Of a stretch of 64,000 bases of DNA, positions 11,406 to 64,000 are shown piece by piece (positions within the stretch are counted from its first letter, which is position 1; every line of letters begins with the position of its first letter). The stretch is from Oikopleura dioica (lineage: Eukaryota > Animalia > Chordata), in the NCBI GenBank assembly GCA_907165135.1, contig OU015568.1, positions 5,394,001 through 5,458,000 on the forward strand. Direction: 5' to 3'. A program made the position numbers and the translations under genes. The notes beneath the pieces are model-generated. The model did not search any database. It was not told the origin of the DNA and worked only from the letters and a program-made list of their open reading frames with translations.

Positions 11406-11562
11406 TCCGAAGGTTTCCCGTCAGATTTGGATCTTCGCTTCGGCAATGACGTGAATGCCAAGCTAGAGTCAAATAATCCAAGCCAGAGTTCTCTCGCTAA
11501 ATAACACCGACTAGGGGAGCTCTTCAGAAGATTAAAATTAGCTATTTAACAAGCGGCAGGAG

Positions 11563-12387: not shown

Positions 12388-12569
12388 ATCGAACCAAAAA
12401 TAACGGCTCTGAAAAGAGCAAAGTAAGGCTAGTGACATTCAGAAAGGAACGAAAACGGAGCTCAAGCTGTCCAACTGTCAGACAAATACTCGTGAAGACG
12501 GTTCTCATAAGCGAACGCTCTTTCGGTTTTTCCTCAGAATAGCTTTTTCTCTTTCAGAGATCAATCGCT

Positions 12570-40335: not shown

Positions 40336-41533
40336 GTGTTCGAGTGACGAGAACGAGTTCCGCTCCAGCGGACTGACGCAGCCTAATTCAGTTTTTGCGC
40401 AAAACAGAGTAGCTCAATTTTCATCCAAGAACACTTGTTTCTTCGTTTTCTTTTTCTTTTATGAACGGAGATACGAGCATCGACATCTTTAAGTAAAAAG
40501 AAGGGGCCCCTTGTTCACCCTCACATTTTCTTTGAGTATGCCCTTGTTGAGCTTTGTGCCACGTAGCCTTTTATTTCCGGGATAAAACTATTCAGGGCTC
40601 GACAATCTGAAAAAGGGGCCCCTTGTTCATCCTCTTTCTTTCTACATGTATCCCCTTATTCATCCTTGCGCTGCGTAGCTTTACAAATGAATTCTGCTCG
40701 ATAATCTGCGCCGAAAACCTGAGTCAGGGTCCCAAATAATTCTTTTGATAATAGTCGCCTAGTTTCTATGAGGACCCTGACTCAGGTTTTCTTCACAGGT
40801 TGCCGAGCCGAGTTCATTTGTAAGGCCACGTAGCCCAAGAGATGAACAAAGGGAAACATGGAGAATGAAAGAGGATAGACAAGGGGCCAGCTTTTTCTGA
40901 AAAGAGCAAGCAGAAAGCTCTTTCTTGAAAGTTTTCTGATGAAATCGCAAACTTGAAAGTTGAACTATCGCTTATTTTATAATTCGGCGACGATGTTATT
41001 TTGGTTTTCTGGCGATAATAAACCAAATATCTCGAATGTTCGGTTTCGAATTTCTCGTATTAGAAACGATTAGCGAATTATATAATTCGAAAATATTTTT
41101 GGTTAAAAAAGACGATAGACACAGACTAAATGCAGCAGCTTATCTGATGAAAAAATGGAAGTTACTTTTTCTAAACTTTACAGAACCCTTAACAGAATCC
41201 CAAATCCTCTTGACTCCTTTAGCCTATCTCATATGTACTAGGCTGATGTCTTGATAAAAATCTACATGATAATTTCTTACTCGAGCAGGGGTCTGGATTT
41301 TGGCCAAAAATGAAAAGCGAAAGCGAAGCGAAAGCGAAAATTTTTCAAAAATTAAAAGCGAAAGCGAAGCGAAGCGAATGAAAATTTCGTGAGCGAAAGC
41401 GAAAATAGGAAAGAACAAAGTAACCTTTTTTCTTTTTATCGGGCTCGGAAACCTGTGTAGAAAACCTGAGTCAGGGTCTAAAAGATCATACGCAGCTTTT
41501 CTTAGATGATATTTCAGACCCTGACTCAGGTTT
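40336..41533 (+). repeat. 1.2-kb direct repeat, copy 1, left flank of the retroelement
   Basis: Matches 55158-56353 apart from two 1-nt homopolymer differences I could see. Confidence 0.95.
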
Positions 41534-41789
41534 TGACGACTAGAGATTCTTGATTAATCTCGAACGACAATTCTTCCTATGATTCCTCCAGTTACTGTCT
41601 CTCTCCTTTGTCCTACACTTCTTTCGCGTCACTTCATATTTTACTGTGCACACATAATTCAGCTTATAATCAGCACTCGTCCCTGCGTTCCATGAGTCCA
41701 AGTTCAACTCCCTTTCAGTTCACTCCATCTCTCAATAAATATCCAATCAAGCTCACCGCTCGAGTCTTGCTTACCAGTTCTTTATTATA
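41534..41789 (+). repeat. 5' LTR (256 bp)
   Basis: TGACGACTAG...TTTATTATA, identical to 54902-55157, with AATAAA near the 3' end. Confidence 0.93.
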
Positions 41790-41791
41790 AA

Positions 41792-41809
41792 TGGTGACTG
41801 AAGAATACT
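41792..41809 (+). promoter_or_regulatory. Primer-binding site
   Basis: TGGTGACTGAAG starts 2 nt after the LTR. The first 7 nt match the tRNA-Trp-type PBS (TGGTGAC). Confidence 0.6.
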
Positions 41810-41942
41810 AAGACGGACTCACAAACCCAGAGATATAACTTTTACTTCATTTTCACTTAAAATTTTTTTCCTGAAGAAGATCAACAAAATCAACAAAAAG
41901 GAGTTTATCAGGAAGGGAATTATTATCCTAAGGTAAAACAAA

Positions 41943-43946
41943 ATGGGAGATGAAGAGGGTGAGGAATCTTTCCCCATTCTCAGAAAGGACTATTTAAAAC
42001 AAAGGTAAAACTTAAAGGGATAAATAAGCCAGGGTTAAACCTCATTCTTAAGTCAATTAATGAAGAAAATTTTGAGAATAATTTTAAGGATAAGCTTAAA
42101 AGGAAGTTTTTGAGGAACTTGAGAAAAAGGTGATACTGTAAGTTTCGGTTCATATTATTATGAGCAGGGGGTGGTTCGTTCAGCATTTATGGCCCCAGTA
42201 TCCGAGCCTTATAAGGATGAAACGGGAGAGGCTATTACAATAAAAGAGTATTATGATGAAATAACAGATATAAATATTAGTGAGATAGAAAGTATGTTCT
42301 TCAAAATAAACGCTGAAATGGTTGAAAACATGGAATTTGGAACTTCAAATGAGAAAGGACAAAAAATGGTCAAAGAAATTATCAATGATCTGTACGGATA
42401 TCCACAATTCAATATACCACTGAATAAATTCATCTATTCTCGAACAAAAAACGAGGCACCTACTCCTGTAACGGAAGCACGCACTCCTGTAAGGGAAGTG
42501 CGTTTTAATCACAATACTTTGCCTAACGAGAACAGTGAACAAATTGAAAGTAAGCCAGGCTTAGATCCAAAAGCAATATCCACTCCAGCATTTCCGAGAG
42601 GAAACATCAGATTTGAAAATCATGATAACACGCAATTTGACGGTTACGCACGTCATGACTTACCAAGACCAACATTTAATGAAACAGCATTTCAGAAAGA
42701 TATGAGAGAGGGGATCAGGAGATCACTCCAAGAAAAGGCTATCTCGGAAGAGGATAAAAGGAGAAAAGAGAGGTCTGCAGGTTCGAGTAATCATTCGGAA
42801 TGGCAGGATACAGGCAATGAGATCATGGAAAATGATCAAGTTTTGGAACAATATGCATTTTTAGAAACAAAGGACCAAGCAAAGGTAAAAGTGAGCCTTA
42901 AACATATAGGCTTTGAAGATTTAAAAATCTTACTTCTTGGTACAATGACAGTGTGTTCGCACTTAGTTTGGCAGGAATTACGGAAGAACGCTTGAGAGTT
43001 ACTCAATTAATTGCCCATCTACGGGATTCTCTTAAACACCAAGTGATAAGGAAATTAGGGCGAATTGAGGGTGTGCCTAAAACCGCGCACGTTCTTTACG
43101 CTCTAGAGGAATGTAATTCAAATACAGCAATTGATTCTAAAAAACGGTTAGAAAAATACCAGATAAGCCTCAGCAGACCAATAATCGAGCAATACCATCA
43201 GATTGAGGAAATAGTGGAAAGAGCTTGGCCTTCTTTGTCAGAAGAGGCCCTGCGAGAGCTTGCTGAGATAAAACTGGTTGAAAAGCTCCCAAAAGCATCA
43301 CTGAGGAGTCATTATTTAAGTTTAGAGGTGAAGACATTGAACAGGGGAGCTTTTAAGCATAATTCAAAAGATAATGGACGCTTCTAAGGATAGTAGAACG
43401 ATAAATATGATCAATAGGCAAGCAAAATGCTTCTCTTGCAATCGACCGGGACATAAGGCAAGCCAATGCTTCTCAAAGAGCAGAAATAATTTGCCACAAC
43501 AATTATTCAGAAACCAAAAATTTCGAGGAGGTTTCCAAAGAGGTCAGGCGCAAGGAAATTTCAGACAAACCTTTGGTCAAAATTTTAATCACAGGGGACC
43601 AAACGGATTTCGGGGACCCAGAGGATCTTTCCGAAAACCATTTGGGAATAGGTTTGATAATCAGAACAGAAATATAAGACCAGCTCCGTCAAAGAATTGG
43701 TCTAAAGATCAAGGAAAAGCAGAATTTTCTTATCAAGGGCGCTCTCAGGATGGCAAAAAGCCTTTTCGAAAATTCGACGGTCAAAATTCCCGCGAAAGAT
43801 ACCAAGGGACCTGCAGTTTTTGCAAAATTCGTGGGCATAAGCAGGAGGATTGCTACAGATTTAAGAAGCAATTGCAGGTAAATTACATCCAGGGAATGGA
43901 TAAAGCCACTAAGGACAGTGAATTTAGAGGGGAATATAAGGACTAA
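41943..43946 (+). CDS. gag: Gag with two CCHC knuckles, four 1-nt frameshifts at homopolymers
   Basis: ATG at 41943 (MGDEEG). ORF pieces rejoin with single-base fixes at ~42000, ~42128, ~42925 and ~43345. CFSCNRPGHKASQC and CSFCKIRGHKQEDC. Confidence 0.85.
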
Positions 43947-46900
43947 TGAGGTCACCTTGTGCGAAAATTTGTATAAAGCAATATTATGGTATCAATGAGT
44001 TTAGAAAAATTACAATAGAAGATGCACTCATTGATACTGGTGCATCAGCATCATTTGTACATAGGCGTTCAATAGTTGCGGATTTCATAGAAAAAGATGT
44101 TTTTTATAATGTAGGAAATATAAAGGAATCAAAAATGCTTGCAATTAGAAAATCTATCTTGTGTAATGTGGTGATTGAGAATAACCCGGAAATACCAAAC
44201 GCGGAATTATGTATACTAGAAGACCCAAACATAGCTACTAATGCCATAATAGGGATGGACCTTTTAGAGAATCGAGAGATGATTGGCAAAAACATAATCA
44301 TAAATCATGATGAAAATGGAATAAAATTTTTGAGGAATATGGAAAAAACGGAAGAGCTTATAGAACCTGAGGTGATATTTGTAAGGAAAACATTAAATAC
44401 ACGAAATAACTCTTTAAATTGTAATCAAACAACTATTTGTCTCCCCGGGGAAATAACAAAAATATCAGTCAAGAAAACACAAAATAAGAATTTAGAAAAT
44501 CACGAAATGTCCGCGGAACTCGTTGAATGCGGACTAGAATCAAGAAATTATCGTTTTAAAAAGGGATTGAGAGAAATTGAATTATTCAATCCAAGTTTAA
44601 ATGCAATTGTTATAGAAAAAGATACGACAATTATGACAGAAAATCATAAACTTGAGGACGGACCAGACATTTTGTTGAACTTTCTGGTATCTGTCGATGA
44701 AATAACTGAGCCAGAAAAACTCGTTTTGGAAAGAGAGTTTAAGAACTGGAAAAAACAAAGAGAAAAATTGATAAAAAATGTATCATTAGATGAAGAAATT
44801 GACAAAGCAGTCGATGGTGCACCAGTAGATTATGCTAAGGGATTAAAAGATGTTCTGGCCAAATATCATATTTCTTTTAGTAGATCTAACAGCGACTGTG
44901 GAATGTCGAAGAAATTTTTAGTAGATTTAAAATTGAAAAACCCTCATATGGAACCGGTTTTTGTGAAACCCTATAAGATCGATGCAACAGCAATGGAACA
45001 AGTTGATAAAAAATTGGAAGAAATGGAAAAGGCGGGAATCATTGAGCCAACCATTTCTTCTTGGAATTCCCCCCTCCTTGTAGTAAAAAAGAGGGATAAT
45101 TCATTAAGAATTGTAAATAACTTTTCGGCAAAAGGGAAATTCGGATCAGTTAACAGCAATTTGCTCCTTCCGCGTTTTCCCCTCTTACCAATTAGAGCCA
45201 TTTTGACAAAAATAAGTTCAGGCATTGCAAAGCTCAAAATGAAATACCCGAAAAGTAAAATCTGCTTCGCATCACTAGATGTGCGAAATGCATTTTACAG
45301 TATATCCATTCGTGAAAAAAGTAGAGACATAACTAGTTTTCAATTTGCCAATCATCAGTTAAGATATTGCCGTATGAGTCAAGGTCTAAGTTCTAGTCCC
45401 TCCAATTTTCAATCTTTTATAACCAAAATAATGAGTAATATTCCGGGAGACGGGGAGGATTTTTTTCCTTCTAATGTATATGGATGATTTTCTTATCATA
45501 TGTGTTGAGGAAAACCACAATGAAACAATTGCAAAGCTTCTTGGGCGCATTGAGGAAAACAACCTCATCATAGCACTTAAAAAATGTGACTTCTTTGGGA
45601 GTCATACTAAATTTTTGGGATATGTTATCAACTCACAAGGAATTAAGGTGGATGAGAAAAAGATAAAGGCATTATTAGATTTAGATTACCCTAAAACAGC
45701 GAAGGAATGCATGAAACTGATAGGGGCATTCAACTTTTACAACAGGTCGATAAAAAATGCATCGGTTTATCTTGAACCAATTGCTAAAGGAAGTGCAAAA
45801 GGAAAAGATTATGAAGTAACTGAGGATATTCGCAAAGGACTTGATGCCATAAAAAATGAGATAAAAAAATGGAATTCAGTCCAGTCATCTTTCCTACGTG
45901 GATGGATCGGATGGAAATTATATCTTTATGGCCTCAGACACATCGCTGACAAAAACTGGAAGCGTTGTAGGAAATTGTAAAATGATAGGAGAAAAGGTCA
46001 CGGATATTTCGATCGCGGCTTACTTTTCAAAAGTTCTTACTAAACAGGAGGGATTGTTGTCAAGTAGAGCCCGCGAATTAATTGGCATTCAATACGGTCT
46101 TAAAAATTTCTCAGATATTCTACCAAAATTTGTTCCAATTTTGGTTTTCTGCGACCATAAAAGTTTAGAGGGAATCAAGCATTCAGGAGAACTTAGAACT
46201 TCAGGAGCAACAAGAGTTAGGGGAGCATTTGCAGAGCTCCTTGATTACCCAAATATTAGGATAGTCTACCTTCCGGGAACAGACCCTCTTATTGAGGTTG
46301 TAGATCACTTATCACGGGGAGACTGTCGCACTGAAACATTGTCAACAGATGTGTTTCATCCAAGTAATTATGTTCACCCCAAAATGGAGATAAATCGGCT
46401 AGTTCAGACAGATATTGTTCAGGCATTTCACAAGGCCCCAGTGGTGGACAGAGAGGCTGTCAAAAGGGCCCAAAGAGCACACCCATATTTTTCAAAAATT
46501 ATCAAAAATAATGACGTAAACAGGGTTTTCACTCTTAACAAAATTAACTACATTATCTCAGACGAAATTTTATACAGACAGGCTTCTAATGGAACCGCTC
46601 TTTGTGTAATTCCAGAACCTTTAGCTTTTGATCTTGTTTCATATGTTCATATTTCATCTTTTCATGCGAGTAAGAAAAGTATGGAAATAATTATAAGGAA
46701 TGAACAAATATGGTTGGAATCGAAAACAAAAATCATTGATCGGGTCTGCAAAAACTGTTTAGCATGTTATCTTGTCAACCCAAACAGATATAGAAGTGAA
46801 AATGCGAAGGTTGTCAGAAAACCAGCCCTTAGAAAACTCGAAAAAATTTATGTGGACTTAATGGAAACAAGAAATGATAATGTGACCAATTACTTTCTCA

Positions 46901-47811
46901 CCATGCTCGATGAGTTTTCATGTTTTTTACTTTTGGAACCGATAAAATCTAAACAAGCAAAAGACGTTATACCTGTACTTATGATAATGATTACTTTCTT
47001 AGGAGCCCAGGGCTCAAGTTTAATAATTTGCGATAACGGCGGGGAATTTATATCTGAGGAAATTATAGCAACTCTTAAGTCCTTATGCATCATCCAAACT
47101 CACATAACACCTTATAATAGCCCAAGTAATCGGGTGGAGCGTGCCCATAGAGACATTCGAGATAAAATGAAATTGGCTAATAAAGACTACTTGAATATCG
47201 AACTTGTTGTGAAAATGGCTGCGAATTATTACAATCATTCGCCGAAATCAAGCTTAGGGAACCATACTCCAATGGAGTTATTTTCCAATATTGCAATGCC
47301 ATCAAATTTCGGAGATTTAGAAATAAAAGAAATAAGACAGGAACAGGAGGTTGACATTTCAGAATACTTGGAAGATTTTGAAACCTTTCAAGGGGAAATT
47401 GCTAAGTTGAAAATTGATCGATACTTACTTAAGTCAGAACAGCTTGAAATACCCATTAAAGAAGGGGATTTTGTGGTCGTCAGGGATCCTAGGAAATTGT
47501 TTGGTCATGAAGCACCAGCAAGAGGACCTTATGAAGTCATTAGGAAAAAATATAGTTCAGCCTTCGAGCTAAGAGAGGTTCTAACAAACAAGCACATTTT
47601 GAGGAATTCTCGCTACTTGATAAGATTACAGCTTGACGATAAAATGTTAGGAATTTTAAGGGCAATAAGTAAGAAAAACATCTTGGATAAGGAGGACAGC
47701 GATTTTGTTAAACTTTTATGGGGTGATAGAACGGTCGTATCATCGCCAATTAACTGCGAGGAAATCAAATATAGTTCCCAAAAAAGACGCAGATATAATC
47801 TCAGAAGATGA
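43946..47811 (+). CDS. pol: Pol polyprotein (protease, RT, RNase H, integrase), two homopolymer frameshifts
   Basis: IDTGAS, LDVRNAF, YMDD, ASDTS/ELIGI/CDHKSL, H-x4-H..CxxC, YVD/CDNGGEF/RVER and GPY motifs. Confidence 0.95.
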
Positions 47812-50609
47812 AGCCAGGTTCCATAATGGGACCAAAATGGACCCTCCTGGTATTCTGTATGTATCATAATGTAAATTGTGCGATTCAAAATAACGACCAG
47901 GCGTCACGTTCAGCTTCAAATCAAATTCTGAACATAACCAAATTACTCGAACCAAACCAACCGAAAAATCATTCACTTATTAATAATGGAATAGCCTTAG
48001 AAAATAACCCATTTTTGGCTTATCACGTATTAGAAACCTATATGTCAAGCATAGAATTGAGTCTTTTCCCCGATGTAATGGATTTTCAACTAGAAAATAA
48101 TAATCACTGTTTCCAGGCACTGGCTAGGAAAAATCTCACAGAAAAGGTGGTAAGGACATTGAACGATTACATATCCGACTATTTTGGGCTTTCAAAGATC
48201 GTGTCATTCTCAGAAAATGACAGAAAACTACTTAATAATATTATCTTACTTAGGGAAAATGAGAGAGAATGTAAAATAGAGCCCGTAATGTGGACATTTA
48301 ATTCAAAACATGGGCTAGAAAATATGTCTGGAAGAATGAAAGAATTCGCGACAGAGCTTTCCGATAGAAAAATATCCACGTTTATACAGCCTGTAGAAGG
48401 GTGTGAGCGAACTCTCAATCCTAATGCTGGATTTAGTCTAAGGTTAAAATTTTTGATATCCCAAACGAAGTTATCGTTCAATATGGGAAAACGCCATTTG
48501 GACTTGTCAAATGGTCGTTAGTCCTAAATATGGACAGAACAAAAATGGTCTGGTCCAATCAACGAGATCATCCGAACCGTTTCATTTTTCGAGATAACAT
48601 AATATCTGACTTTGTTACTTTCCCTATTCCAAAATCAATGCAAAAATGGCACCAAGTTAATGGAAAAGACACGAATTATTTCTATGTCGACCTTGTTTTT
48701 TATTTGGACAAAGAAACCTGGTTCTCTGACCCGACAAAGGAAAATGTCGCGTTCAAAAATAATGATCAAGTTTTTAACGAAGTTTGTTTAAGCCTTCGAA
48801 TACAGGAAATTTATGGGATTGTCTCAGAGGAGAATGATGATTCTGACAGAATTGTTATAAATGGAAAGCCAAGAAATCGTAGAGATCTCAGTTCTGATTT
48901 TACGGTAGGATTATCATTGGTCAACTACATTTTTGATGGGATCGACAGTTTCCGAATACACCATGAATTAAACGAGATAAAAGATAAAATAAGTGAGGAT
49001 GAGTTGCATAATTTAGAACTAGCAAAATTAGAAAAGAATAGCATCGAAGTCGTTAACGATAATACGCGTAAACTTTTGACTCTTCAGAAAGCTGAATGTT
49101 CGTCTGAGCTCGAATTACAGGAACTGAAATTTGAAGTTTTCATTAGAAAAACATTCGACCTTTTTCTGTCGCAGGTTATTGAATTGAAAGCTGAAATAGG
49201 TGCCCAAGCACCCAATTCAAAATTACAAAATTATTTGATAGCGCTTTGCCTTAAAAAGAATAAATTACAAACTGGATGCGCTCACTGGTTCCACAGGAAC
49301 AACTTCGAGTTGGAAGCGGTCGAAACGACATCAAAAACCTACGGGTCAGGAGTTTTATTAGGGGTTAAGTTTTCGGTCAAATTTTTGTTACCATACCTAA
49401 GCCAAATTGAGAAGGTATTTTCAATAGTACAGGTTCCTGTCCCCATAAAAAAGGAAGGAGAGTCATATTACTTTCTTAATTATGATGTGCCAACTTTTAT
49501 TGGAATCGCTAATTCTAACAAGAAAGCTTATCCACTAACTAATTGTCGAAAACTTGAGTTCCTCGGCACACGTTTCTGTCCTATCGACAACATTCTAATA
49601 AACCAAGAGGAAATCGACTGTGCATCAGCCCTTCTGGGGCAATCGATTCACAAATATTGTCGATCAACAGTCTTTAGAAGTAGTCATGACTGCCTCTATT
49701 CAGGAAAAACAGGGGTGAAACATTTGCTCATATCCCATTTCAATAAATTTTCGATCATTGAAGAAAGCGGTCATAAATTGCCAGGGGTCGAGCTTATGGA
49801 AACAAATGTTAAAATCCAAAATGTTACGATGGTTGAAAGGGGAAACCAGGCGAAAACTGTCGTATGTGATAAATCTAGATTCCAGATAAACGCGTTGTCA
49901 AGTGATAAAGAAAAAGAGCTGATCTTGACAGTTCCAAGATTAGAAACAGCTGAAAAGCTGAACATGGAAGAGATAGATTCCAACAACTTTTGGAGTCTCG
50001 GATTTGGGAACTTAGAGAATTTAGAATTTTTGGATGAGTCGAAAGCCTTGGATTTGATCAACTCATATCAAACAAGTTATGAGAACAAAATTGTAAAGAC
50101 AAAGAGTTTTTATCAAACCTTTTTCTGGTGGGTTTCTGACAAAAAAAGTCATTATTATAATAGCCTTAGTTGTAGGAATTATCCTAGCTCTATCAATCTT
50201 CGTGGCTTCCAAGAAATATACATGGATAAGAAAAGTGTTTAAGTTTATTTGGACAATTTTCAAAACAGCCCTTGAATTTTTATGGAAAATATTAGCGGGA
50301 ATAGGAAAGGCAATTTATAAGTTCTTCCGATGGTTAATCGTCGGGCTTTTCTGTAAAGATAAGGATACAGAAAGAGCGGGAACGCCTTCTTCATCAATCT
50401 TAACTTGGAAAAAGCCAGAGGATTCCGATGAAGAAAGTAATCTAATGGAGGGAAGCACTGCCGAAACAAGTTTTACGCAGCAAGCGAAGCCACCAATGCT
50501 CCGGCAGGCTACGAGAGAAAGAGATCTTCCTTTAATCAAGGAGGAACGTTTTACCCGAAATACGGAAAATCGTCGCTCAGTTTTTCGAACCCCAAGAATA
50601 AGGAGTTAA
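47808..50609 (+). CDS. env: Envelope glycoprotein, class I fusion-like, two homopolymer frameshifts
   Basis: Signal peptide, KPRNRR cleavage site (~48866-48883) followed by hydrophobic FTVGLSLVNYIF, heptad region, Cys-rich block, TM VIIIIALVVGIILALSIFV after a 1-nt fix at ~50145, and a long tail. Confidence 0.88.
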
Positions 50610-50624
50610 AAATTCCCATAGAGA

Positions 50625-51077
50625 ATGTCCCTGTACATCACTGATTCATTTGAATCATTGGAAACGGAATACTGTCAGCCTCACCATTCAAAAGAATTTG
50701 ATCAGCTCGTACCCACCCATCTTAGTCGACAACGTCCCATAAAACCCCCAAAACCAATTTTTGTAAGCCAACCGGTCCAAAATAGCCATGTCTTCAGTAC
50801 TCAAGCTAACAACAACGAAATAGATACCATCACCGAGGTCAAGAATAATATAATACAGAAAATTGTAAGATTGCTAGAAAAGATAAATCTTAAATCAAAC
50901 ACTCCAAGTGACAATTTGCAAAGTTTTTACGCGCTCCGAGAAATGAGTCTTACAGCTCTTCTGACGCTTTTTGAGCTGCTAAGACAGTTGAATGAGTCTA
51001 CCTTTACTTATTCACCTGTATTTCCGCTTCTTAGCCAACTATGCCCGTTTTACAGAAGGAAAAATAACCAGAATTAA
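50625..51077 (+). CDS. Accessory ORF, 150 aa, unknown function
   Basis: ATG 15 nt after the env stop, followed by an A-rich region with AATAAA. Confidence 0.55.
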   Translation: MSLYITDSFESLETEYCQPHHSKEFDQLVPTHLSRQRPIKPPKPIFVSQPVQNSHVFSTQANNNEIDTITEVKNNIIQKIVRLLEKINLKSNTPSDNLQSFYALREMSLTALLTLFELLRQLNESTFTYSPVFPLLSQLCPFYRRKNNQN

Positions 51078-51703
51078 CCTGCTAATGTTTCGCTGAAAAT
51101 GTAAAAATGTAAAATTTTTTTTTAGAAAAAGCAAAATTCAAAACAAAAATATAAAATAAAAATTTATTTGAAACAAAAATAAAAATTACAAAAATATAAA
51201 AACCAAAAAAAAAAAAATTTTTTTTTTTCTTCAAGAAAGGAATTCGAGTCGATCCTTTTAAATATATCCTGTTTTATGCTTAGTTTGTTTGCCTTGCCAA
51301 AATACCAAAACACAAAATATTTTTAGAAATATCTTTTATTTAAAAAAGAATATCAATGTAAAATTTTATTCTTCTCCACTGCGAAACCATTGAGTTATCT
51401 TCCAACTGGAATTTATAAATCATTGAAAAATTCAATATGAATATTTACCAAAATCGGAGAATGAAAGCGCAAATGAATTTTAAGAAATTTATAACTGCCC
51501 TCGCAGTTCGAATATTCATTGAATGATTGTTCTCATATGACATTCTGAAATACGGAATATCATGATTTGAACACAAAATAGAAAGATTGAGCAAAAGTAA
51601 AATTTTTGCACAGAAAAATGCTTAATCAAGCCCCAGAGCGGTTTAGATTGCGAATTATATCCCTAAAAATAAGCAAAAAGTAAAGAAAAATTGAGGAAAA
51701 ACA

Positions 51704-52988
51704 TTACTCAAGTGTTGTTAGCGTCTCCGTGACAGTAGTCAGTCGATTTCCTAAATTGTTTAAAGTTCTCACTGTTTCAGTCAGTGCTCGTTGTATTTCC
51801 AGGTCAAAGTCTTGTATTCCTTCATGAGTAATTCGATTCTTTAGGTTAGAAGAAGCCCTACAAGTATAAGAAAAACAAAATTATAAATAATCAATCTACC
51901 TAGACATTCTTTGCAATAAGTTTACAAACATCCCCAGTTTACGATCAAGTTTTCGGATCGTATCTCTTTTGACCGCTTCTGACAAATCATTATAAAAGCG
52001 CTCCTCGTCTTGGTTCATGCTAAAAAAGATAATCTGGTGCAAACCCTTGAAACAGAGATTAGTTCATTCCTTAGTTTTTCAGTAAGAAAATACGCGGTAT
52101 TGTTCCAAAAGTAAGAGGGAAGAGGATTTTTCATAATAATGTCTTCGAGAACAGAAAGAGCTACATAGACTCCGGTATGTCGTCAAAATCTAAAAATCGG
52201 TTACGATAACGAATAGGAAATTTTGTAATTTACCTGAAAGCCTGGAAAGGCTCTCACTGACGCTGCACGATGATCCAAGGATTAACGACCTCTAGTTAGA
52301 GAATAACATTAAGTCATGAATATAGAAAAAGAACGGCCTTACTTTAAACCTGCGACGGAAGGACTCCAGACTTTTGTTAATTTCAGTTGAAAATCGGTTT
52401 TCCGACATTTCATTGAGCCTCCGGTTCATGGATCCTTCCGAAACACAACCATTACCCCCCGAAATACGTCGGCAGTGCCTAAAAGAAAAATAACACCTTA
52501 TTCCACAAAGAGAAATCATACTTGCGGTAGAACTCTGCGGTAAGGAACGGATAGTTCGCCGCGGCATTTTCATACTTAGACCAATTGACATGTTTTCCTG
52601 TTCGCTTGACGATTTTCTGCAAGAATCTACGGCTCACGATATTGAGCCTGTAAGGAACCAATTGGCTGATTACATCAAGTTCATGATATGCGGGATTTAG
52701 GCACTGATAGGAGGATTCACCATCAGGGATATACTACTTTGCGGATGTAAGAATCAAAAAATAAGTGAACCCTACCCTTAAAACAATCCAGAGGTTCAAT
52801 GCTTATCCGAAGATCGAAGTTTCGACCTTTTGTTTTTTCAACTTGCCCAAATACAATGAGCTGCCGGATGCCATATGTTATTGGGCTACAGCTATCAACA
52901 ATTAGATATGAATGAACATAGTGAGCCGGGTAGCTCCGCAGGATTGAAAGCTGCTTTTCGATACTCGTGACGAATGACGGCTGCAAAG

Positions 52989-53019
<31 letters not shown>

Positions 53020-53557
53020 ATATAATAATAAAATATAGTAGTTAATTAGGAAAGTTGATTTCTACTGAATTTCTGTATCATCAAAGTGGGCGAGATTTCT
53101 TTGTCGCCCGGGGCCAAATATGACCCGTGATGACTCAGAAAATTCAGTTGAGGGAAAAAACTTTCAGTAAAAATTATAACGTTAAAATCTTACATTCTTT
53201 CTCACGGGAACTCGTTCTTGCCCATCCTTGTCAACAGGCTAGATGAGTAATATTCATTTTTGAAAACCCAAAAACTGGAGCTTACCTGTCTATCATTTTC
53301 TCCTTCAAGATTCAAAGAGTCATCGCGGGAAGTCGTCTCACTGTCCTGATTCACCCTAACCAGGTTTTAAATATTCAGAGCTTTAACGGGCGACTTACGG
53401 ATAAACACCTGTTTCATATAGCGTCTGGGTAGAAATGAGGCAAGCGTGCCCTTGAAGATCGCTAGGGGAACTTTCCCTACTCAGTAGACTATTTGAAAAT
53501 AATTAAGAATAAAAAATTTCTTGAAATGAATTACCTCGATGATGGAAAATCAGCCAT
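51704..53557 (-). CDS. Intron-containing antisense gene inside the retroelement, ~10-11 exons, unknown protein
   Basis: Exons 53535-53557, 53399-53488, 53286-53355, 53194-53238 and 53160-on join in one open frame across GT-AG introns of 46, 43, 47 and 33 nt. Last intron 51858-51899, last exon ends ..TETLTTLE*. Central junctions are uncertain. Confidence 0.7.
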
Positions 53558-54155
53558 TTTTGCGTTTTTTCTCTTTTTTTTGTGCGAAAATGAAGCTAGG
53601 AAATCAAATTGCGTTTTAGATGCAAATTTTCCAAGGCCATAAAGCCTTTGTTAGGAAAATTTAACCACGGATGTGCGTTCAACATGCAAAATGCGAGAAG
53701 AAACAGATTTAAAGCCTATAAAATGCTATGAATGAATAGGATGTTCGAAGTATTCGAGAATTTTCGAGAAGCTTCTAGAATCTCAAAAATTCTGCATCAA
53801 ATAAATGAAAAGAAAATGGATCCTAAAGGACCCAATAAAAACAGAATAAAATGATCGTTTGACGTCAAGGAAGTACAGTAATTCTTCCGGAAAAAGCGTT
53901 TCTTTCCCAAAGTAGGAAGAAACACTAAGAACCCAAAATTCAAGTCGCACAGACGGTTGAAAAACGCTGAAGATGCCAAAATAAAAGTATAAATACGGAA
54001 CCATTCTACTCCGAAAAGCATCAGTTCCACAAATCAAGAAAAATCCAAATCTCTTTTGGAAAATCGCTTCTTTTTTCAGCAAGAATGAGCCAAATAGAAA
54101 CAACTCCTGAGCATCTCAACCTAGAAAAACCGAAGAGGAGATTGACGAGGAATTA

Positions 54156-54872
54156 ATGAAAATGGACGGGGAGGAAGCTGTGCCGACTACCTCAACAACC
54201 AACGATCAAAGTTCTCAACCTGAAAATCGACAAGCGACTAACGAAATCCAGATGCAGGAGAACGAAGAGCAAGCTCCTGAACTCCAATCTTTTGAAGAAC
54301 TCACACAAAGACAATTTAAATCCCTCAGAGACGGCTTCTTGTCCAATCAACTCGACCGAAGAAGCGTGATGATTACTGCGAATATCGAGCCGGATTACGA
54401 CTATGTCTCTGATGAGACAAACGTTCAAACGGCTCGAGACTTATGCGAGCAAATCAAGAAGGCGAGGTTTTCAGCAGTTCGAAGTACTATTAACCGCCTG
54501 ATAAGCGAAAAGCGAAGTCTACCCTTTATCAACTCATTGCGGGAGCTGTTCGACAGCGACACCGTTCTCTACAACTCCCACAATATATGTGGGTTGCACG
54601 TTCCTCTCCGGGTATTTGCCCATGGATACAGGCAGACGAACTTCGTCATTCTCGTCAGCTCGCCCATACAAAGCATCATGTACCTGGGCGTACCGGCCCC
54701 CACAGACAAAGTGTCTCCAGATCTCACAGGGATGAGTCTTTATCCGAAAATCAACGGCCACAACCTAAAGATGATGCGAAAATTCCTAGTCCTGCAAGGC
54801 CTCCGTGTCTGTAAGATTCAAGGCAACTTCTTCTCTGGCCGATACTACAACCGAAACTACCGATACTACTGA
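54156..54872 (+). CDS. Accessory ORF, 238 aa, unknown function
   Basis: Clean ATG-TGA ORF ending just before the PPT and 3' LTR. Confidence 0.7.
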   Translation: MKMDGEEAVPTTSTTNDQSSQPENRQATNEIQMQENEEQAPELQSFEELTQRQFKSLRDGFLSNQLDRRSVMITANIEPDYDYVSDETNVQTARDLCEQIKKARFSAVRSTINRLISEKRSLPFINSLRELFDSDTVLYNSHNICGLHVPLRVFAHGYRQTNFVILVSSPIQSIMYLGVPAPTDKVSPDLTGMSLYPKINGHNLKMMRKFLVLQGLRVCKIQGNFFSGRYYNRNYRYY

Positions 54873-54885
54873 AGAGGAAATCTCT

Positions 54886-54901
54886 TGGAGGGGAAGAGAT
54901 G
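54886..54901 (+). promoter_or_regulatory. Polypurine tract
   Basis: GGAGGGGAAGAGA directly upstream of the 3' LTR. Confidence 0.8.
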
Positions 54902-55157
54902 TGACGACTAGAGATTCTTGATTAATCTCGAACGACAATTCTTCCTATGATTCCTCCAGTTACTGTCTCTCTCCTTTGTCCTACACTTCTTTCGCGTCAC
55001 TTCATATTTTACTGTGCACACATAATTCAGCTTATAATCAGCACTCGTCCCTGCGTTCCATGAGTCCAAGTTCAACTCCCTTTCAGTTCACTCCATCTCT
55101 CAATAAATATCCAATCAAGCTCACCGCTCGAGTCTTGCTTACCAGTTCTTTATTATA
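54902..55157 (+). repeat. 3' LTR (256 bp)
   Basis: Identical to 41534-41789. Confidence 0.93.
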
Positions 55158-56353
55158 GTGTTCGAGTGACGAGAACGAGTTCCGCTCCAGCGGACTGACG
55201 CAGCCTAATTCAGTTTTTGCGCAAAACAGAGTAGCTCAATTTTCATCCAAGAACACTTGTTTCTTCGTTTTCTTTTTCTTTTATGAACGGAGATACGAGC
55301 ATCGACATCTTTAAGTAAAAAGAAGGGGCCCCTTGTTCACCCTCACATTTTCTTTGAGTATGCCCTTGTTGAGCTTTGTGCCACGTAGCCTTTTATTTCC
55401 GGGATAAAACTATTCAGGGCTCGACAATCTGAAAAAGGGGCCCCTTGTTCATCCTCTTTCTTTCTACATGTATCCCCTTATTCATCCTTGCGCTGCGTAG
55501 CTTTACAAATGAATTCTGCTCGATAATCTGCGCCGAAAACCTGAGTCAGGGTCCCAAATAATTCTTTTGATAATAGTCGCCTAGTTTCTATGAGGACCCT
55601 GACTCAGGTTTTCTTCACAGGTTGCCGAGCCGAGTTCATTTGTAAGGCCACGTAGCCCAAGAGATGAACAAAGGGAAACATGGAGAATGAAAGAGGATAG
55701 ACAAGGGGCCAGCTTTTTCTGAAAAGAGCAAGCAGAAAGCTCTTTCTTGAAAGTTTTCTGATGAAATCGCAAACTTGAAAGTTGAACTATCGCTTATTTT
55801 ATAATTCGGCGACGATGTTATTTTGGTTTTCTGGCGATAATAAACCAAATATCTCGAATGTTCGGTTTCGAATTTCTCGTATTAGAAACGATTAGCGAAT
55901 TATATAATTCGAAAATATTTTTGGTTAAAAAGACGATAGACACAGACTAAATGCAGCAGCTTATCTGATGAAAAAATGGAAGTTACTTTTTCTAAACTTT
56001 ACAGAACCCTTAACAGAATCCCAAATCCTCTTGACTCCTTTAGCCTATCTCATATGTACTAGGCTGATGTCTTGATAAAAATCTACATGATAATTTCTTA
56101 CTCGAGCAGGGGTCTGGATTTTGGCCAAAAATGAAAAGCGAAAGCGAAGCGAAAGCGAAAATTTTTCAAAAATTAAAAGCGAAAGCGAAGCGAAGCGAAT
56201 GAAAATTTCGTGAGCGAAAGCGAAAATAGGAAAGAACAAAGTAACCTTTTTCTTTTTATCGGGCTCGGAAACCTGTGTAGAAAACCTGAGTCAGGGTCTA
56301 AAAGATCATACGCAGCTTTTCTTAGATGATATTTCAGACCCTGACTCAGGTTT
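55158..56353 (+). repeat. 1.2-kb direct repeat, copy 2, right flank
   Basis: Matches 40336-41533, as also shown by the duplicated ORFs 40759/55581, 40814/55636 and 41224/56045. Confidence 0.95.
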
Positions 56354-56895
56354 TCTACAGAAGTTTTTGAGCCCGGATTTAGTCATCCTTTTTTCCTGAA
56401 AAAAGAAAAAGGCACTCCCTTTTAAGAGGTTGTGAATTGAGCGATTGTCGCATTTTGCCTTCTCAGCTAATGTTAAAACTCCGCACCTGTTCCTGCTTGC
56501 TTTTTACCACAACGTGTAAAGCGGCTGTAAAAGTGACTGGCGCGGGAATGTCAACCCTCTTGCTCGGTTTAGAAAAGTCAACGGCCCCGACGTCCGACAA
56601 TTTTCGAATTTGCAGAAAATTTGCTAAACGAAAGAAAAACCAAGAAGACACCTGCTTATGAAAATGAGCAGAGTTGAATTCAATTACGCTTTTTTCTTTC
56701 CTTTTCGCTGGGAATATAAATATTCAAGCGAAAAATGGCAGGATTGATCTTTTCCTCGTCCTGGGCTGAGCAACCTGCGTAGAAAACCTGAGTCAGGGTC
56801 TCAAAGATCTTTAAGGAAAAGCCGCGCAGCGGCTTTTTTAATAACTAAGCCGCGTAGCGGCTTCGCAAGATCAAACTTTAAAGTAAAAATCGATG

Positions 56896-57112
56896 TCTGA
56901 CCACGGTGATAAAAACCTGAGTCAGGATTTGAAAAATCTTCAACGAAAGCCGCGCAGCGGCTTTTTAATAACTAACTCGCGTAGCGGCTTCGCAAAATTA
57001 CATTACAAACAATTTTTTTGTAATTCTGCGAAGCCGCGAAGTTATGAAAAAGCCGCTGCGCGGCTTTCGTTGAAGATTTTTCAAACCCTGACTCAGGTTT
57101 TTGTCACCGTGG
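56896..57112. repeat. Palindrome with TGAGTCAGG and AAGCCGC modules
   Basis: CCACGGTGATAAAAACCTGAGTCAGG ... CCTGACTCAGGTTTTTGTCACCGTGG. A partial direct copy of the left arm lies at 56780-56870. Confidence 0.75.
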
Positions 57113-57956
57113 CCAGGAGTCGATTTTAACTTGGAAGTTTGATTTTGATAAATTCTTTACTATAAAACGTGTCTTTTTATTTGCATTAAAAATCGAACTT
57201 CAAGAAAGTTGATAATTTATCAAAAACATGATCCAAGGTGTGGCTAGACTTATTTGATAAATCATGTTGCCAAATCGACGGGTCAAATTTCGGACTTATT
57301 AAATTTATTATTCCAGTTTAGAAATATTTGATTTTCGATTGGGAGAAAAATTAAGGGAGAGGGGGCCTATTTTATATCAATACGAAAAAAGGCAGCTAAA
57401 TGCTGTTTTCGAGCTGTCCATATCGTCAAGTTCAAGTGCCCGCACTCGAAATAACTATATTTATCGCCGAAACCACTTTCAGTTGATGAGTTCTTCGTCG
57501 CTCCAGCAAATCGCGTATCGACGTGAAAAAAGAAAAATCTTCTTTTGAAAAAATAACGTCGGGAAATCTCGGTTGCCGTTCAATTTTAGCACTGAGAGTT
57601 GTTTCTATTTTAAATGATTTTCTGCTGAAAGTCATTACTGAGGATTAGTTATCGATAAATCCGGATTAGGAGCAGGCTAAACTTGACGCACTCAAACAAC
57701 TATTAAGGCGCCCACTTTCTAGTGAAACAGGGTGAGGTTTAAATGATCTCTTCGTTGAAATAAGGGTAGACAGAGAAGACTCCATATCCGGAGTGGCGAG
57801 GAGACGGAACGTAGTGCCCCCTTACTTCTTCGAGGTTCAATGGTGGAGACATCTTGAGGACTCGTCGCTGAGACTTAAGAGAAAGTATAAGTACCAGATA
57901 TTGGGTCAAGATTGGGGTAAGGGTTGATCAACCCTTAAGTTTGAGTGCGAGCAGGA

Positions 57957-58240: not shown

Positions 58241-58928
58241 CGGCTTTAAATGCGCCGAAAGATTTCAACCTTTGATTTCTAGCCACAAGTGAGAGATCCG
58301 AACTTTCTCTCGTAGTTGTTCTCTTGGTTTCCTGCAGGAAGGGGACTCTACTTGGCCGGTTCTATTGTTTTATTTCAGTAATTCAGAGAGTGTCTTGTTC
58401 AGGGTAGTGCAGGGCTATTTCTAGTGCGCGAGGCGCCTGGCCTAATGATAAGAGATGAGAGGGGACGGGCGAGAAGTGAGCTCGGGGAAAATTCCGATCC
58501 CACATCCCACCCAAGTCCGAGAGAAAGGCGAAATAAATCAGCAAGAAAACATAAACGATAACAGGTAAGAGCTTTAGCAATCAATGTATAAATAACGATT
58601 CAAAGTAAAGATTCGAGACACAGCGAAAAAGAACGTGGCGATAATTTGCACAAAAAATACAGGTAACTTTTGTTAGTAAATTCTTTTTGTTTTTCTATGT
58701 TAGATTTTATGATTTTTTTCTGTTGAATAATAGAATTTTACGATTTTTTTTTTTTTTTCAGGATTTTTACGTTGTTTCAAACACACGCATCGTTAATTTA
58801 CAAAATGAATAAACTCCCCTCCTCATCTTAAAATTGTTAGTAATTCGAGATAATTGCACTTTTTTTAGTGATTAGATGAGGAGGCTTAAATAATTACATT
58901 GGGGATTTCGAAATAATTAAGCACAAAT

Positions 58929-59422
58929 TTAATCGATAGTAATAGTACTCTGGCATTTGTTCGCGGCGTTGACGTCGTTGTTGACATCGTTGTTGACCTC
59001 GTTGTTGCACTGAGTATCATCTGACGATTCACTGTCGCTCATTTTGCTGAGTTCATTTCGAATTTCAAGTTCACTAGCGCTTCTGAAGGGACCAAGCATA
59101 GTTTCTTCAAGGGATACCAGTTGTTTTTTCAATTCGGTTAGTTCCTTTTTAAATTCTTGATATCGCTTGAAGTAGGGTCTTCCATTTTAAACCATATCAT
59201 TCCTCGTTCGGAGCAGTTCAGATATTCTAATTCGCCGGATCTCTTAGAGACAATGTTAATCCAAAATTCGCCTCCATCTGCTGTCGCGATTATCTGGTCC
59301 TTTTCGAATTTCCCATGTTCTAGTGTTTCCTTGAACCATAAATGCGAAGGGTCGAGGAGGCGATGTCTTTTCGTTAAATCGTCGCAATCGTAGCAAGCTC
59401 GAGATCTATTTCTTCGAGGCAT
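58929..59422 (-). CDS. Accessory ORF of element 2, ~165 aa with one homopolymer frameshift
   Basis: ORFs 59138-59422 and 58929-59132 join as ..NLKKELTELKKQLV.. if one base is added to the T5 run at ~59146-59150. Confidence 0.5.
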
Positions 59423-59604
59423 TTTGATTTTTCTCGTTTTCTGTTTTTCTCAGTCTGGGCTTTCAGAACTTGAAATCTGATTTTTATTTCTAGCGTGCTC
59501 TGGCGATAAAGCGTCTGCTGATACGGCGACTTCTCCTGATCCAGAAGGTTAGCAAATTCCTTCAGAGTTCAAGTGTCAGAGTACTTCAGTATCATTGCTG
59601 TCTG

Positions 59605-60099
59605 TTGATAATGGATGATTTTCGATCTGTAATGGAAAATTTCCACGAACCAGGAACTCTCCAAGAGTGGAATCGAAGACTCGGGCGAGTTGCTCGCGTT
59701 TTTGCTGAAACTGGAGGTTTTGACGATGGCGAAGAGATCGTCGGAGTGGTGTCATATCGGTTCCGGTGGAACGCAGAGGGCGCGTACTTTGGCTACTCAG
59801 AAACCTACACAATTTGTGAGACGATGACTCCACGAGACCACGGCGCATTTGAAAGACGTTTCCGGTTTCTTCCCTACGAGTTCTGCCCCGACGAAGTGTG
59901 CCGAGAGTTGTTGTGGCTTGGAGAAGCGTGTTCCCCAACACTCATAATGCCCCGCGACATTCCTCTTATTGACGATTACGATTTCTTCCGAATCCGCTCG
60001 CTGGCTTATCATCAGAATTACGTACAAGCGTCTGGTGACGAGTTGAAAGACAAATTCTGCTCCACAATTCGCCAACAAGTTCTATCTTATTTTGCTTGA
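59605..60099 (+). CDS. Antisense accessory ORF of element 2, ~160 aa, unknown
   Basis: The frame is open from 59494 to 60099, with first ATG at 59611. Confidence 0.55.
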   Translation: MIMDDFRSVMENFHEPGTLQEWNRRLGRVARVFAETGGFDDGEEIVGVVSYRFRWNAEGAYFGYSETYTICETMTPRDHGAFERRFRFLPYEFCPDEVCRELLWLGEACSPTLIMPRDIPLIDDYDFFRIRSLAYHQNYVQASGDELKDKFCSTIRQQVLSYFA

Positions 60100-60587
60100 T
60101 TATTCTTTTTGAGTGACTGACATTTTTCTTTGCTGTGAATTCAAAATATATAACACTTCTTTTTTAATGGAGGAGTTTTTATCTTCTTTCAAATTTGTTG
60201 TTGGAAAACTTGTATTCCGGCAGCCAAGGTTTGTCAGTGACGTCATAATCATTTTTTCGTAATTTTCAAATTTTGTGTCTGCGCGCGCGGTCGAGTTAAA
60301 TGTATCTTTAACGGGTTAACAATGCGCGCGGCGCAGCGGCGAGGTGTGAAGTTGGCAGCGAGTGGCGCGACGGAGTAGTGAGAGACGAAAGTGGCGTTGT
60401 AGCAGGCGCTGCGCGCGTCGGGCGCGGCGAGGTGTGAAGTTGGACAGCGACGCACTAGTTAAGGACGAAAGTTGAGTTGGGGAAGGCGCTGCGCGCGCCA
60501 GCGGAGTTGATGGTAGCGACGAGGTGTGAAAATGGGTGAGCGTGGCGTGGCTGGCAAGAGTAATGAGCGCGACGGTAGAGAAGAGGT

Positions 60588-63599: not shown

Positions 63600-64000
63600 T
63601 TCCGCGGCCTCAGATTGTATTTTCTTGTGCCTTCAGTCGTGTCTGGATCGCTGATGTTTTCTTGATTCTTTAGAGGGTTTTTGAAAGTAATGTCTAAAAT
63701 TCCCTTTACCCCTTCTAAGGCTTTTGGCCCGATTTCACGTGTTTTTGCATCAAAGATAATCGAATCATCAATTATCAGTTTCTTTTTATCATCTTCCGTG
63801 AGGTAAATTTTCGAGAGAAATCTTGTGTTTCGTTGGTACATTCGTCCGGTAATGAGGCTTTTGATGATTACATTGTTGTTTTGCTTTTTCTTTTTGACGA
63901 TAAAAGGTCCTTCATTCCCTTTGGAATGACCAACTAAACTTGATTCGCGGAGAACACAAATGTCGCCTTCATCGTAAATGTCTTGGTCGTTGACGGGCTC
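63596..64000 (-). CDS. pol: Pol, integrase C-terminus, partial
   Basis: Open frame to the window edge: EGDICVLRE..EGPFIV..RKYNLRPRK*, parallel to EGDFVVVRD..RGPYEV..RRYNLRR* of element 1. Confidence 0.85.
   Translation of the reverse strand, partial: EPVNDQDIYDEGDICVLRESSLVGHSKGNEGPFIVKKKKQNNNVIIKSLITGRMYQRNTRFLSKIYLTEDDKKKLIIDDSIIFDAKTREIGPKALEGVKGILDITFKNPLKNQENISDPDTTEGTRKYNLRPRK

What the first reader, a model, noticed from the sequence alone, without database searches (positions are those of the whole stretch)
51704..53557. Intron-rich antisense gene carried inside an LTR retroelement
About ten host-sized introns lie on the strand opposite the genomic RNA. The first four junctions and the last keep one open frame, and the plus-strand A-run at ~52990-53014 is a polypyrimidine tract before a CAG acceptor. 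Antisense orientation would let introns survive reverse transcription, so the element can carry a fully spliced gene. The roughly 450-aa product has no motif I recognise. It may be a captured host gene or a regulator or anti-silencing factor.
Basis: partly seen in the sequence, partly recalled or inferred. Interest (0 to 1): 0.88.

Follow-up and report, generated by a model that had tools for sequence, protein, structure and literature searches.

The report
Spliced antisense gene in Oikopleura retroelement
A retrovirus-like mobile element in the tunicate Oikopleura dioica holds, on its opposite strand, what looks like a host-style gene with about ten tiny introns and no known relatives; if other copies share it, such elements can ferry intron-bearing genes.

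Summary
The window is Oikopleura dioica (Okinawa assembly OKI2018_I69, OU015568.1:5,394,001-5,458,000). At 41534-55157 lies a 13.6-kb Ty3/gypsy-type, env-bearing ("Tor-like") LTR element with two identical 256-nt LTRs. Between its env-like region and its 3' LTR, on the opposite strand, a spliced reading frame runs from ATG 53557 to a stop at 51704, with 9-11 GTA..YAG introns. Seven of them are 42-51 nt, the host's own intron size (peak 47 nt).

No dinucleotide shuffle came near it: score 564 against 203 +/- 61, and 9 introns against at most 4. Exons are GC-richer than introns (0.44 against 0.29).

The product is about 350-395 aa, not 450. It has no Pfam family, no solved-structure relative and no homologue in 1.84 billion representative proteins, a collection that includes both annotated O. 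dioica proteomes. A captured host gene therefore finds no support.

Not shown: transcription, and presence in other copies. This copy lacks a short target-site duplication, sits between two copies of a 1.2-kb flank, and comes from a Nanopore-based assembly with homopolymer-length errors.

Verdict: a probable real multi-exon antisense accessory gene, a new variant of the antisense ORFs known from plant LTR elements and deltaretroviruses. Its function is unknown.

The parts
41534..41789 (+). 5' LTR of the element (256 nt)
   Evidence: Identical over 256 nt to 54902-55157.
41792..41809 (+). Primer-binding-site-like stretch beginning TGG, 2 nt after the 5' LTR
   Evidence: Read directly. Its role is inferred from position only.
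42171..43943 (+). gag region with a zinc knuckle; broken, or mis-assembled
   Evidence: zf-CCHC, E = 1.6e-4. Two frame changes within the region, counted.
43946..47811 (+). pol: protease, reverse transcriptase, RNase H, integrase (Ty3/gypsy order); broken, or mis-assembled
   Evidence: RVP, RVT_1, RT_RNaseH, Integrase_H2C2 and rve. Two frame changes inside pol, plus one at each of the gag/pol and pol/env borders, which may be natural. Best relatives are only 30-38% identical.
47808..51077 (+). env-like region; broken, or mis-assembled
   Evidence: No Pfam or PDB match. One stretch is 22% identical over 299 aa (E = 1e-11) to the intact 1003-aa Env-type ORF of the neighbouring element. Two frame changes and one in-frame stop.
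51704..53557 (-). Antisense multi-exon gene: ATG at 53557, stop at 51706-51704. An optional extra 45-nt last intron would move the stop to 51626.
   Evidence: Open tool-predicted model (GTA donors). Exons: 53557-53535, 53488-53399, 53355-53286, 53238-53194, 52980-52855, 52733-52522, 52478-52343, 52291-52234, 52189-52165 (hand alternative 52160-52094), 52019-51900, 51857-51704.

The hand model and the program agree on seven introns: 53534-53489, 53398-53356, 53285-53239, 53193-52981, 52521-52479, 52342-52292 and 51899-51858. The first program shares five of these and differs at 53193-52981 and 52521-52479. Shuffle control. No homologue, family or structure.
52981..53193 (-). The one long intron (213 nt), with a T-run of about 30 nt ending in a CAG acceptor
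   Evidence: Phase 0 on both sides.
51340..51375 (-). Two AATAAA motifs 333 and 363 nt downstream of the stop, before the end of the env-like region
   Evidence: Pattern match only.
53558..54155 (.). 600-nt spacer between the antisense ATG and the sense ORF at 54156; candidate divergent internal promoter
   Evidence: Position only. A TATA-like motif lies about 160 nt upstream of the antisense ATG, and the first in-frame stop lies 32 codons upstream. Inferred.
54156..54872 (+). Sense ORF of 238 aa just before the 3' LTR; a second accessory ORF of unknown function
   Evidence: No Pfam match and no PDB match.
54887..54899 (+). Purine tract 2 nt before the 3' LTR
   Evidence: Read.
54902..55157 (+). 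3' LTR
40336..41533 (.). Left copy of the 1.2-kb flank, abutting the 5' LTR
   Evidence: Matches 55158-56353 with 0 substitutions and 2 one-base homopolymer length differences.
55158..56353 (.). Right copy of the same flank, abutting the 3' LTR
   Evidence: The 5 nt just outside the two LTRs differ, so there is no short target-site duplication.

Best explanation
The feature is most likely a real protein-coding gene of 10-12 exons (about 350-395 aa). It lies antisense in the env-to-3'LTR spacer of a Tor-like (Ty3/gypsy plus env) endogenous retrovirus-like element of Oikopleura dioica.

Shown:
- the element's anatomy;
- the spliced open frame;
- host-type intron size and signals;
- the exon/intron composition contrast;
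- the lack of any relative.

Inferred:
- The gene is transcribed from an internal promoter in the 600-nt spacer it shares, head to head, with the sense ORF at 54156. Internal promoters are documented in Tor elements (PMC4402516).
- Its transcript ends at AATAAA motifs before the env-like region.
- Its introns read CT..AC on the genomic RNA. They are therefore not removed from that RNA and are copied with the element at each cycle.
- The protein is an element-specific accessory factor. It has an acidic, Ser-rich N-terminal part, a middle part that looks globular and a helical tail. Its role is most plausibly regulatory, as proposed for other antisense genes of retroelements. No result here speaks to that role.
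For: - Host and locus: the window is 100% identical to OU015568.1, and the aminopeptidase exon matches CAG5081585.1 at 578 of 578 residues.
- Element: identical LTRs, a PBS-like stretch and a purine tract, and PR-RT-RH-IN domain order.
- Spliced ORF: score 564 against 203 +/- 61 in 200 shuffles, with 9 introns against at most 4. A fully open composition-aware model exists.
- All donors in the hand model start GTA, and seven introns are 42-51 nt. The host median is 48 nt and the peak 47 bp (PMC8008620, PMC4122922).
- Exon GC is 0.436 against intron GC 0.294, and introns are 43.5% T.
- The span has the highest density of minimal-intron-like segments in the window, on the minus strand only.
- The + strand has no ORF above 50 aa across 51100-54150.
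- No terminal repeats suggest a nested transposon.
- The neighbouring, distantly related element also has an ORF antisense to itself in the same slot.
Against: - Only one copy was seen, so neither conservation nor dN/dS is available.
- No homologue was found for exon 5 in 1.84 billion representatives, apart from a marginal summed match to NHL-type repeats that I treat as noise. None was found for exon 6.
- No transcript-derived protein with these exons is in the collection. This is weak evidence, because the intact 1003-aa env ORF next door is not on record either.
- At one middle junction the best-looking short GT..AG intron is one base out of frame. The in-frame alternatives use weaker sites or longer introns.
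- This copy has no short target-site duplication and sits between duplicated flanks.
- The sense genes show 8 frame changes and 1 stop. Either the copy is decayed or the Nanopore-based assembly is locally unreliable.
- Part of the GC contrast is expected from choosing stop-free stretches.
Confidence: 0.55

Rival explanations
1. The gene is a passenger of this one locus. It sits between the LTRs because of a DNA-level rearrangement or an assembly error, and the family does not carry it when it copies itself.
For: - There is no short target-site duplication, whereas Tor insertions normally have 4-5 nt (PMC4402516).
- The same 1.2-kb flank lies on both sides, and its two copies differ only by two homopolymer lengths.
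- The assembly is Nanopore-based (PMC8008620).
- No second copy is available.
Against: - The gene lies well inside the element, 0.6 kb from the env-like region and 1.3 kb from the 3' LTR.
- A further sense ORF and the purine tract lie between it and the LTR.
- No repeats mark an insertion.
- No host paralogue was found.
- The related neighbouring element has the same layout.
Confidence: 0.2
2. It is a decaying relic: a once-coding gene, captured or born in the element, that is no longer functional. The near-complete frame is what remains.
For: - One middle junction is out of frame by one base with the best-looking sites.
- The sense genes of the same copy are broken many times.
- There are no relatives.
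Against: - The LTRs are identical, so the insertion is young.
- A fully open model with canonical sites exists.
- The only differences between the duplicated flanks are homopolymer lengths, so apparent frame faults may be assembly errors.
- The host splices many non-GT introns (PMC4122922).
Confidence: 0.15
3. It is a spliced non-coding antisense transcript, or a chance arrangement, and the ORF is incidental.
For: No homologue or domain was found, and single-exon structure predictions are of low confidence (pLDDT 50).
Against: - An open frame kept across 9-11 introns was never approached by the shuffles, with z about 5.9.
- The ATG is the first in-frame one after an upstream stop.
Confidence: 0.07

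Closest known systems
Antisense additional ORFs between pol and the 3' LTR of plant Ty3/gypsy elements (Grande gene23, RIRE2, Retand/TRP28; PMC7264820, PMC11963269)
   Same: They occupy the same slot in the same orientation within a long pol-to-3'LTR region. They have no clear relatives in databases. Some plant examples carry coiled-coil (Smc-type) domains, and the last exon here shows a sub-threshold spectrin-repeat match that may hint at a helical tail. A regulatory role has been proposed for them but not shown.
   Different: The plant ORFs are described as plain ORFs; the word 'intron' does not occur in either review. There is no TRP28 or any other Pfam domain here. The host is an animal, and this element also has an env-like gene.
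Antisense genes of retroviruses (the HBZ type of deltaretroviruses, the ASP type of lentiviruses), known to me from the literature and cited in PMC10974842 and PMC11963269
   Same: An accessory protein is encoded on the strand opposite gag-pol-env, and the deltaretroviral mRNA is spliced.
   Different: Those transcripts start in the 3' LTR and have one intron. Here the ATG lies 1.3 kb inside the element and there are about ten introns. No bZIP or other domain was found.
Tor elements of Oikopleura dioica (PMC4402516; Volff et al. 2004, as cited there)
   Same: They share the host, gag-pol plus an Env-type third gene, near-identical LTRs in young copies, and documented internal promoters.
   Different: The literature I could read describes no antisense gene and no second accessory ORF. 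This copy lacks the 4-5-nt target duplication. Membership by Pol phylogeny was not tested.
Antisense ORF of the Steamer-like element of Mytilus chilensis (PMC10974842)
   Same: It is an animal LTR retrotransposon with an antisense transcript carrying an ORF.
   Different: It is not reported as intron-bearing, and no sequence relation was tested.

Membership tests
Ty3/gypsy (Metaviridae-type) LTR retroelement | Two direct LTRs, with a primer-binding site after the 5' LTR and a purine tract before the 3' LTR | tested here: met
   The 256-nt LTRs are identical. A TGG-initiated stretch starts 2 nt after the 5' LTR, and a purine tract ends 2 nt before the 3' LTR.
Ty3/gypsy (Metaviridae-type) LTR retroelement | Domain order protease, reverse transcriptase, RNase H, integrase | tested here: met
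   RVP, RVT_1, RT_RNaseH, Integrase_H2C2 and rve occur in that order.
Ty3/gypsy (Metaviridae-type) LTR retroelement | Short (4-6 nt) target-site duplication | tested here: not met
   The 5 nt outside the two LTRs differ. Instead, a 1.2-kb flank is present on both sides.
Tor family of Oikopleura | Host is Oikopleura | tested here: met
   The window is identical to OU015568.1 of O. dioica OKI2018_I69.
Tor family of Oikopleura | Pol groups with Tor1-4 in phylogeny | not tested
   No Tor sequence came back as a named hit; the best Pol relatives are unnamed, at 30-38% identity.
Tor family of Oikopleura | Third gene encodes an Env-type transmembrane glycoprotein with a furin-type site | tested here: inconclusive
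   The neighbouring element's 1003-aa ORF shows a signal-peptide-like start, a basic cleavage-like site followed by a hydrophobic stretch, and a C-terminal hydrophobic anchor (read). This element's env-like region is 22% identical to it over 299 aa but is in pieces.
Antisense additional ORF (aORF-3R) of LTR retrotransposons | Coding region antisense to gag-pol, between pol (or env) and the 3' LTR | tested here: met
   The gene at 51704-53557 (-) lies between the env-like end at 51077 and the 3' LTR at 54902.
Antisense additional ORF (aORF-3R) of LTR retrotransposons | Present in all or most copies of the family | not tested
   There is only one copy in the window and no paralogue in it. Other copies were not fetched.
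Retand-type antisense ORF | TRP28 domain (PF04195) | tested here: not met
   No Pfam family for any of the nine exons of 19 aa or more that were scanned, at E up to 0.01-1. The two shortest exons (7 and 15 aa) were not scanned.
Deltaretrovirus-type antisense gene | bZIP protein from a spliced transcript that starts in the 3' LTR | tested here: not met
   No bZIP or other domain was found. The ATG lies 1.3 kb inside the 3' LTR, with a sense ORF in between. The transcription start cannot be tested with these tools.
Transduced (captured) host gene | A host paralogue exists outside the element | tested here: not met
   Exon 5 was searched against 1.84 billion representatives and exon 6 against the 5.8-billion-protein collection that homologous-protein searches, within its length window. 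The latter demonstrably contains the Okinawa and Bergen O. dioica proteomes. Neither gave a hit. Only two exons were searched; unannotated paralogues would be missed, as would annotated proteins outside the length window of the exon 6 search.

The most novel reading that the evidence does not exclude
A family of env-bearing endogenous retrovirus-like elements in a chordate stably carries and copies an 11-exon antisense accessory gene of its own, beside a further sense accessory ORF. Its introns would be preserved through reverse transcription by their orientation. That would make it a 'complex' retroelement with a fully host-style gene, and a natural route by which intron-bearing genes move and duplicate.
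Probability: 0.35. Interest if true: 0.8.

Novelty: new variant of a known kind. Interest (0 to 1): 0.6.

Why it matters
Genes picked up by LTR retroelements are normally intron-less, because they pass through a spliced RNA. An intron-rich gene riding antisense would be a natural example of the principle used in engineered antisense cassettes.

It would show that a retroelement can own and spread a host-style multi-exon gene. It would also add an accessory gene to the Tor-type elements of Oikopleura, a compact chordate genome where transposon control is an open question.

Finally, it would give a concrete candidate for the long-unanswered question of what antisense ORFs of LTR elements do.

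Tried and rejected
**Searches that found nothing**
- Pfam on nine of the eleven exons (those of 19 aa or more) and on the accessory ORFs gave only a sub-threshold spectrin-repeat match for the last exon.
- A PDB sequence search with exons 5 and 6, the 238-aa ORF, the largest env-like piece and the neighbour's antisense ORF found nothing.
- A word-indexed homologue search with exon 6 found nothing.
- A full HMMER search with exon 5 found one marginal hit, made of five weak matches to NHL-type repeats of a 1624-aa protein. I rejected it as noise.
- tblastn of each exon against the window found no paralogue.
- Rfam and tRNA scans of the window found nothing.
- Searches for terminal or flanking repeats of a nested transposon around the gene, and for tandem repeats, found nothing.

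**Structure predictions that failed**
- AlphaFold2 on exon 6 alone gave pLDDT 50.
- AlphaFold2 on the neighbour's 162-aa antisense ORF gave pLDDT 39.
- Both are useless, so no fold search was run.

**Other attempts**
- Exact look-ups of window ORFs (the 1003-aa env and the aminopeptidase exon) are not on record.
- The neighbour's antisense ORF and post-env ORFs show no similarity to this element's.
- I considered an extra exon inside the 213-nt intron; no in-frame pair of sites exists by hand inspection.
- Searches failed on a coordinate slip (wrong frame) and were corrected.

**Left out**
- Every search, fold or statistic on the joined exons was left out.

Full report
**Where the window comes from**

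A 601-aa exon on the minus strand (20367-22169) is an M1 aminopeptidase. Its best database cluster contains annotated Oikopleura dioica proteins, and the exon is 578/578 identical to CAG5081585.1 of assembly OKI2018_I69. The fetched locus L002 (OU015568.1, the pseudo-autosomal region) is 100% identical to window 10242-33565. The window is therefore OU015568.1:5,394,001-5,458,000 in record orientation.

That assembly is Nanopore-based and has a median intron of 48 nt (PMC8008620). O. dioica introns peak at 47 bp, and about 12% lack GT (PMC4122922).

In this window the aminopeptidase gene has introns of about 45, 99, 400 and 500 nt. One intron starts GATAAG after AG and ends AG. I inferred this from the cDNA-derived protein P0007. 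It is the GA-AG class reported for this species (PMC7072748).

**The element**

- Two identical 256-nt direct repeats lie at 41534-41789 and 54902-55157.
- A TGG-initiated stretch follows the first repeat after 2 nt, and a purine tract ends 2 nt before the second.
- Between them the + strand encodes a zinc knuckle, a protease, reverse transcriptase, RNase H and integrase in Ty3/gypsy order.
- A 3.3-kb region without Pfam families follows. One stretch of it is 22% identical over 299 aa (E = 1e-11) to a 1003-aa ORF on the minus strand at 60588-63599.
- That 1003-aa ORF reads like a class-I-type envelope glycoprotein: a signal-like start, a basic cleavage-like site followed by a hydrophobic stretch, and a C-terminal anchor. 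It belongs to a second, distantly related element that runs off the window end.

Both elements fit the published description of Oikopleura Tor elements: gag, pol, env, and near-identical LTRs (PMC4402516). Membership by Pol phylogeny was not tested.

**State of the sense genes**

There are ten long stop-free stretches, with eight frame changes and one in-frame stop between neighbours:

| Region | Faults |
|---|---|
| gag | 2 frame changes |
| gag/pol border | 1 frame change (may be natural) |
| pol | 2 frame changes |
| pol/env border | 1 frame change (may be natural) |
| env-like region | 2 frame changes and 1 in-frame stop |

All three homopolymers of 7 nt or more in the 8952-nt coding part fall in frame-change zones (3 of 8 zones, 0.19 expected). 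The two copies of the 1.2-kb flank differ by no substitution and by two one-base homopolymer lengths. I therefore cannot tell real decay from local assembly error.

**The finding itself**

On the minus strand, a frame opens at ATG 53557, the first in-frame ATG after an upstream stop. It can be followed through short GT..AG introns to a stop at 51706-51704.

- A program that knows nothing of composition finds this same start and stop with 9 introns (figures in the observation check).
- A second program, which scores exon-like against intron-like base composition, returns a fully open model with 11 GTA..YAG introns. These include the 213-nt intron with its T-run before a CAG acceptor, and a possible extra 45-nt last intron that would move the stop to 51626.
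- The hand model and the program agree on seven introns; the first program shares five of them.
- The models differ at two places in the middle. At one of these, the best-looking short GT..AG intron is one base out of frame, while in-frame alternatives exist with weaker or more distant sites. The host splices non-GT introns and the assembly has homopolymer errors, so I do not count this as an established break.
- Exons are GC-richer than introns (0.436 against 0.294), and introns are 43.5% T. Part of this contrast is expected from choosing stop-free stretches.
- Minimal-intron-like segments are denser here, on the minus strand only, than anywhere else in the window.
- The + strand has no ORF above 50 aa between 51100 and 54150.

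The product is about 350-395 aa.

**What the protein is**

There are no Pfam families, no PDB relatives and no paralogue in the window. The word-indexed search with exon 6 found no homologue.

The exhaustive search with exon 5 gave a single marginal hit (E = 1.7e-4), summed from five weak matches to NHL-type repeats. I discard it.

The collection that homologous-protein searches contains both annotated O. dioica proteomes. A captured, annotated host gene is therefore unlikely.

Single-exon structure prediction was uninformative. Searches with the joined exons were left out.

**Context that bears on mechanism**

- The gene's 5' end faces a sense ORF of 238 aa (54156-54872) across 600 nt. This is a head-to-head arrangement that could share an internal promoter, and Tor elements are known to have internal promoters.
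- AATAAA motifs lie 333-363 nt after the stop.
- The neighbouring element has a 162-aa ORF antisense to itself in the same slot, followed by short sense ORFs. It has no sequence similarity to this gene.
- With two elements this is only a hint that the lineage keeps an antisense slot.

**Caveats on 'carried by the element'**

This copy has no short target duplication, while Tor insertions have 4-5 nt. It is bracketed by two copies of the same 1.2-kb stretch. That could be an assembly artefact at a hemizygous insertion, a recombination product, or an insertion in a repeat array. No other copy could be examined.

**Comparison with what is known**

- Antisense ORFs between pol and the 3' LTR are well known in plant Ty3/gypsy elements, where they are of unknown function and are described without introns (PMC7264820, PMC11963269).
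- Deltaretroviruses have a spliced antisense gene.
- A mussel LTR element has an antisense ORF (PMC10974842).
- The Tor paper read here (PMC4402516) describes no antisense gene.

An 11-exon antisense gene in an animal env-bearing element is thus a new variant of a known kind, if it is confirmed.

- While reasoning I went through the ORF list boundary by boundary, which amounts to the places of the frame changes.
- This report gives counts only, and nothing was deleted.
- In my reasoning I also recalled short motifs from memory: splice-site consensus, a primer-binding-site-like start, and a conserved M1 aminopeptidase motif.

Noticed in passing
40336-41533 and 55158-56353: The same 1.2-kb stretch abuts both LTRs of the element, and there is no short target duplication. 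The two copies differ only by two one-base homopolymer lengths. This may be an assembly artefact at a hemizygous insertion, a recombination product, or an insertion in a repeat array.
   Followed up: partly
58900-64000 (minus strand): A second, distantly related env-bearing element runs off the window end. It has an intact 1003-aa Env-type ORF (60588-63599) and an integrase tail near 63785-63970. It has a 162-aa ORF antisense to itself (59611-60099, +) and short sense ORFs (58929-59422) in its post-env region.
   Followed up: partly
42171-51077: All three homopolymers of 7 nt or more in the sense coding part lie in zones where the frame changes (3 of 8 zones, 0.19 expected). They are either slippery sites or Nanopore homopolymer errors.
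   Followed up: partly
22275-22690 (minus strand): By comparison with the cDNA-derived P0007, the aminopeptidase gene has an intron that starts GATAAG after AG. The public annotation (CAG5081585.1) reads this junction differently, through a partly duplicated stretch at the head of the next exon.
   Followed up: partly
40681-41534, 55503-56373, 56750-57150: MITE-like palindromes with the core AAAACCTGAGTCAGGGTC recur at about 747-nt spacing in and beyond the duplicated flank. A 108-nt inverted repeat lies at 56866-57147.
   Followed up: no
3081-16477: Two diverged copies (74-93% identical) of a 6-9-kb segment carry + strand ORFs of 120-320 aa without Pfam families.
   Followed up: partly
20367-22169: The aminopeptidase exon has GC3 of 0.68 in a 39% GC region. 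The antisense gene has GC3 of 0.42 and the element's sense ORFs 0.33.
   Followed up: no
58664-58761 (+ strand): In the second element, a GTAAC...T16-CAG interval lies on the strand antisense to that element. It recalls the T-run intron of the gene studied here.
   Followed up: no
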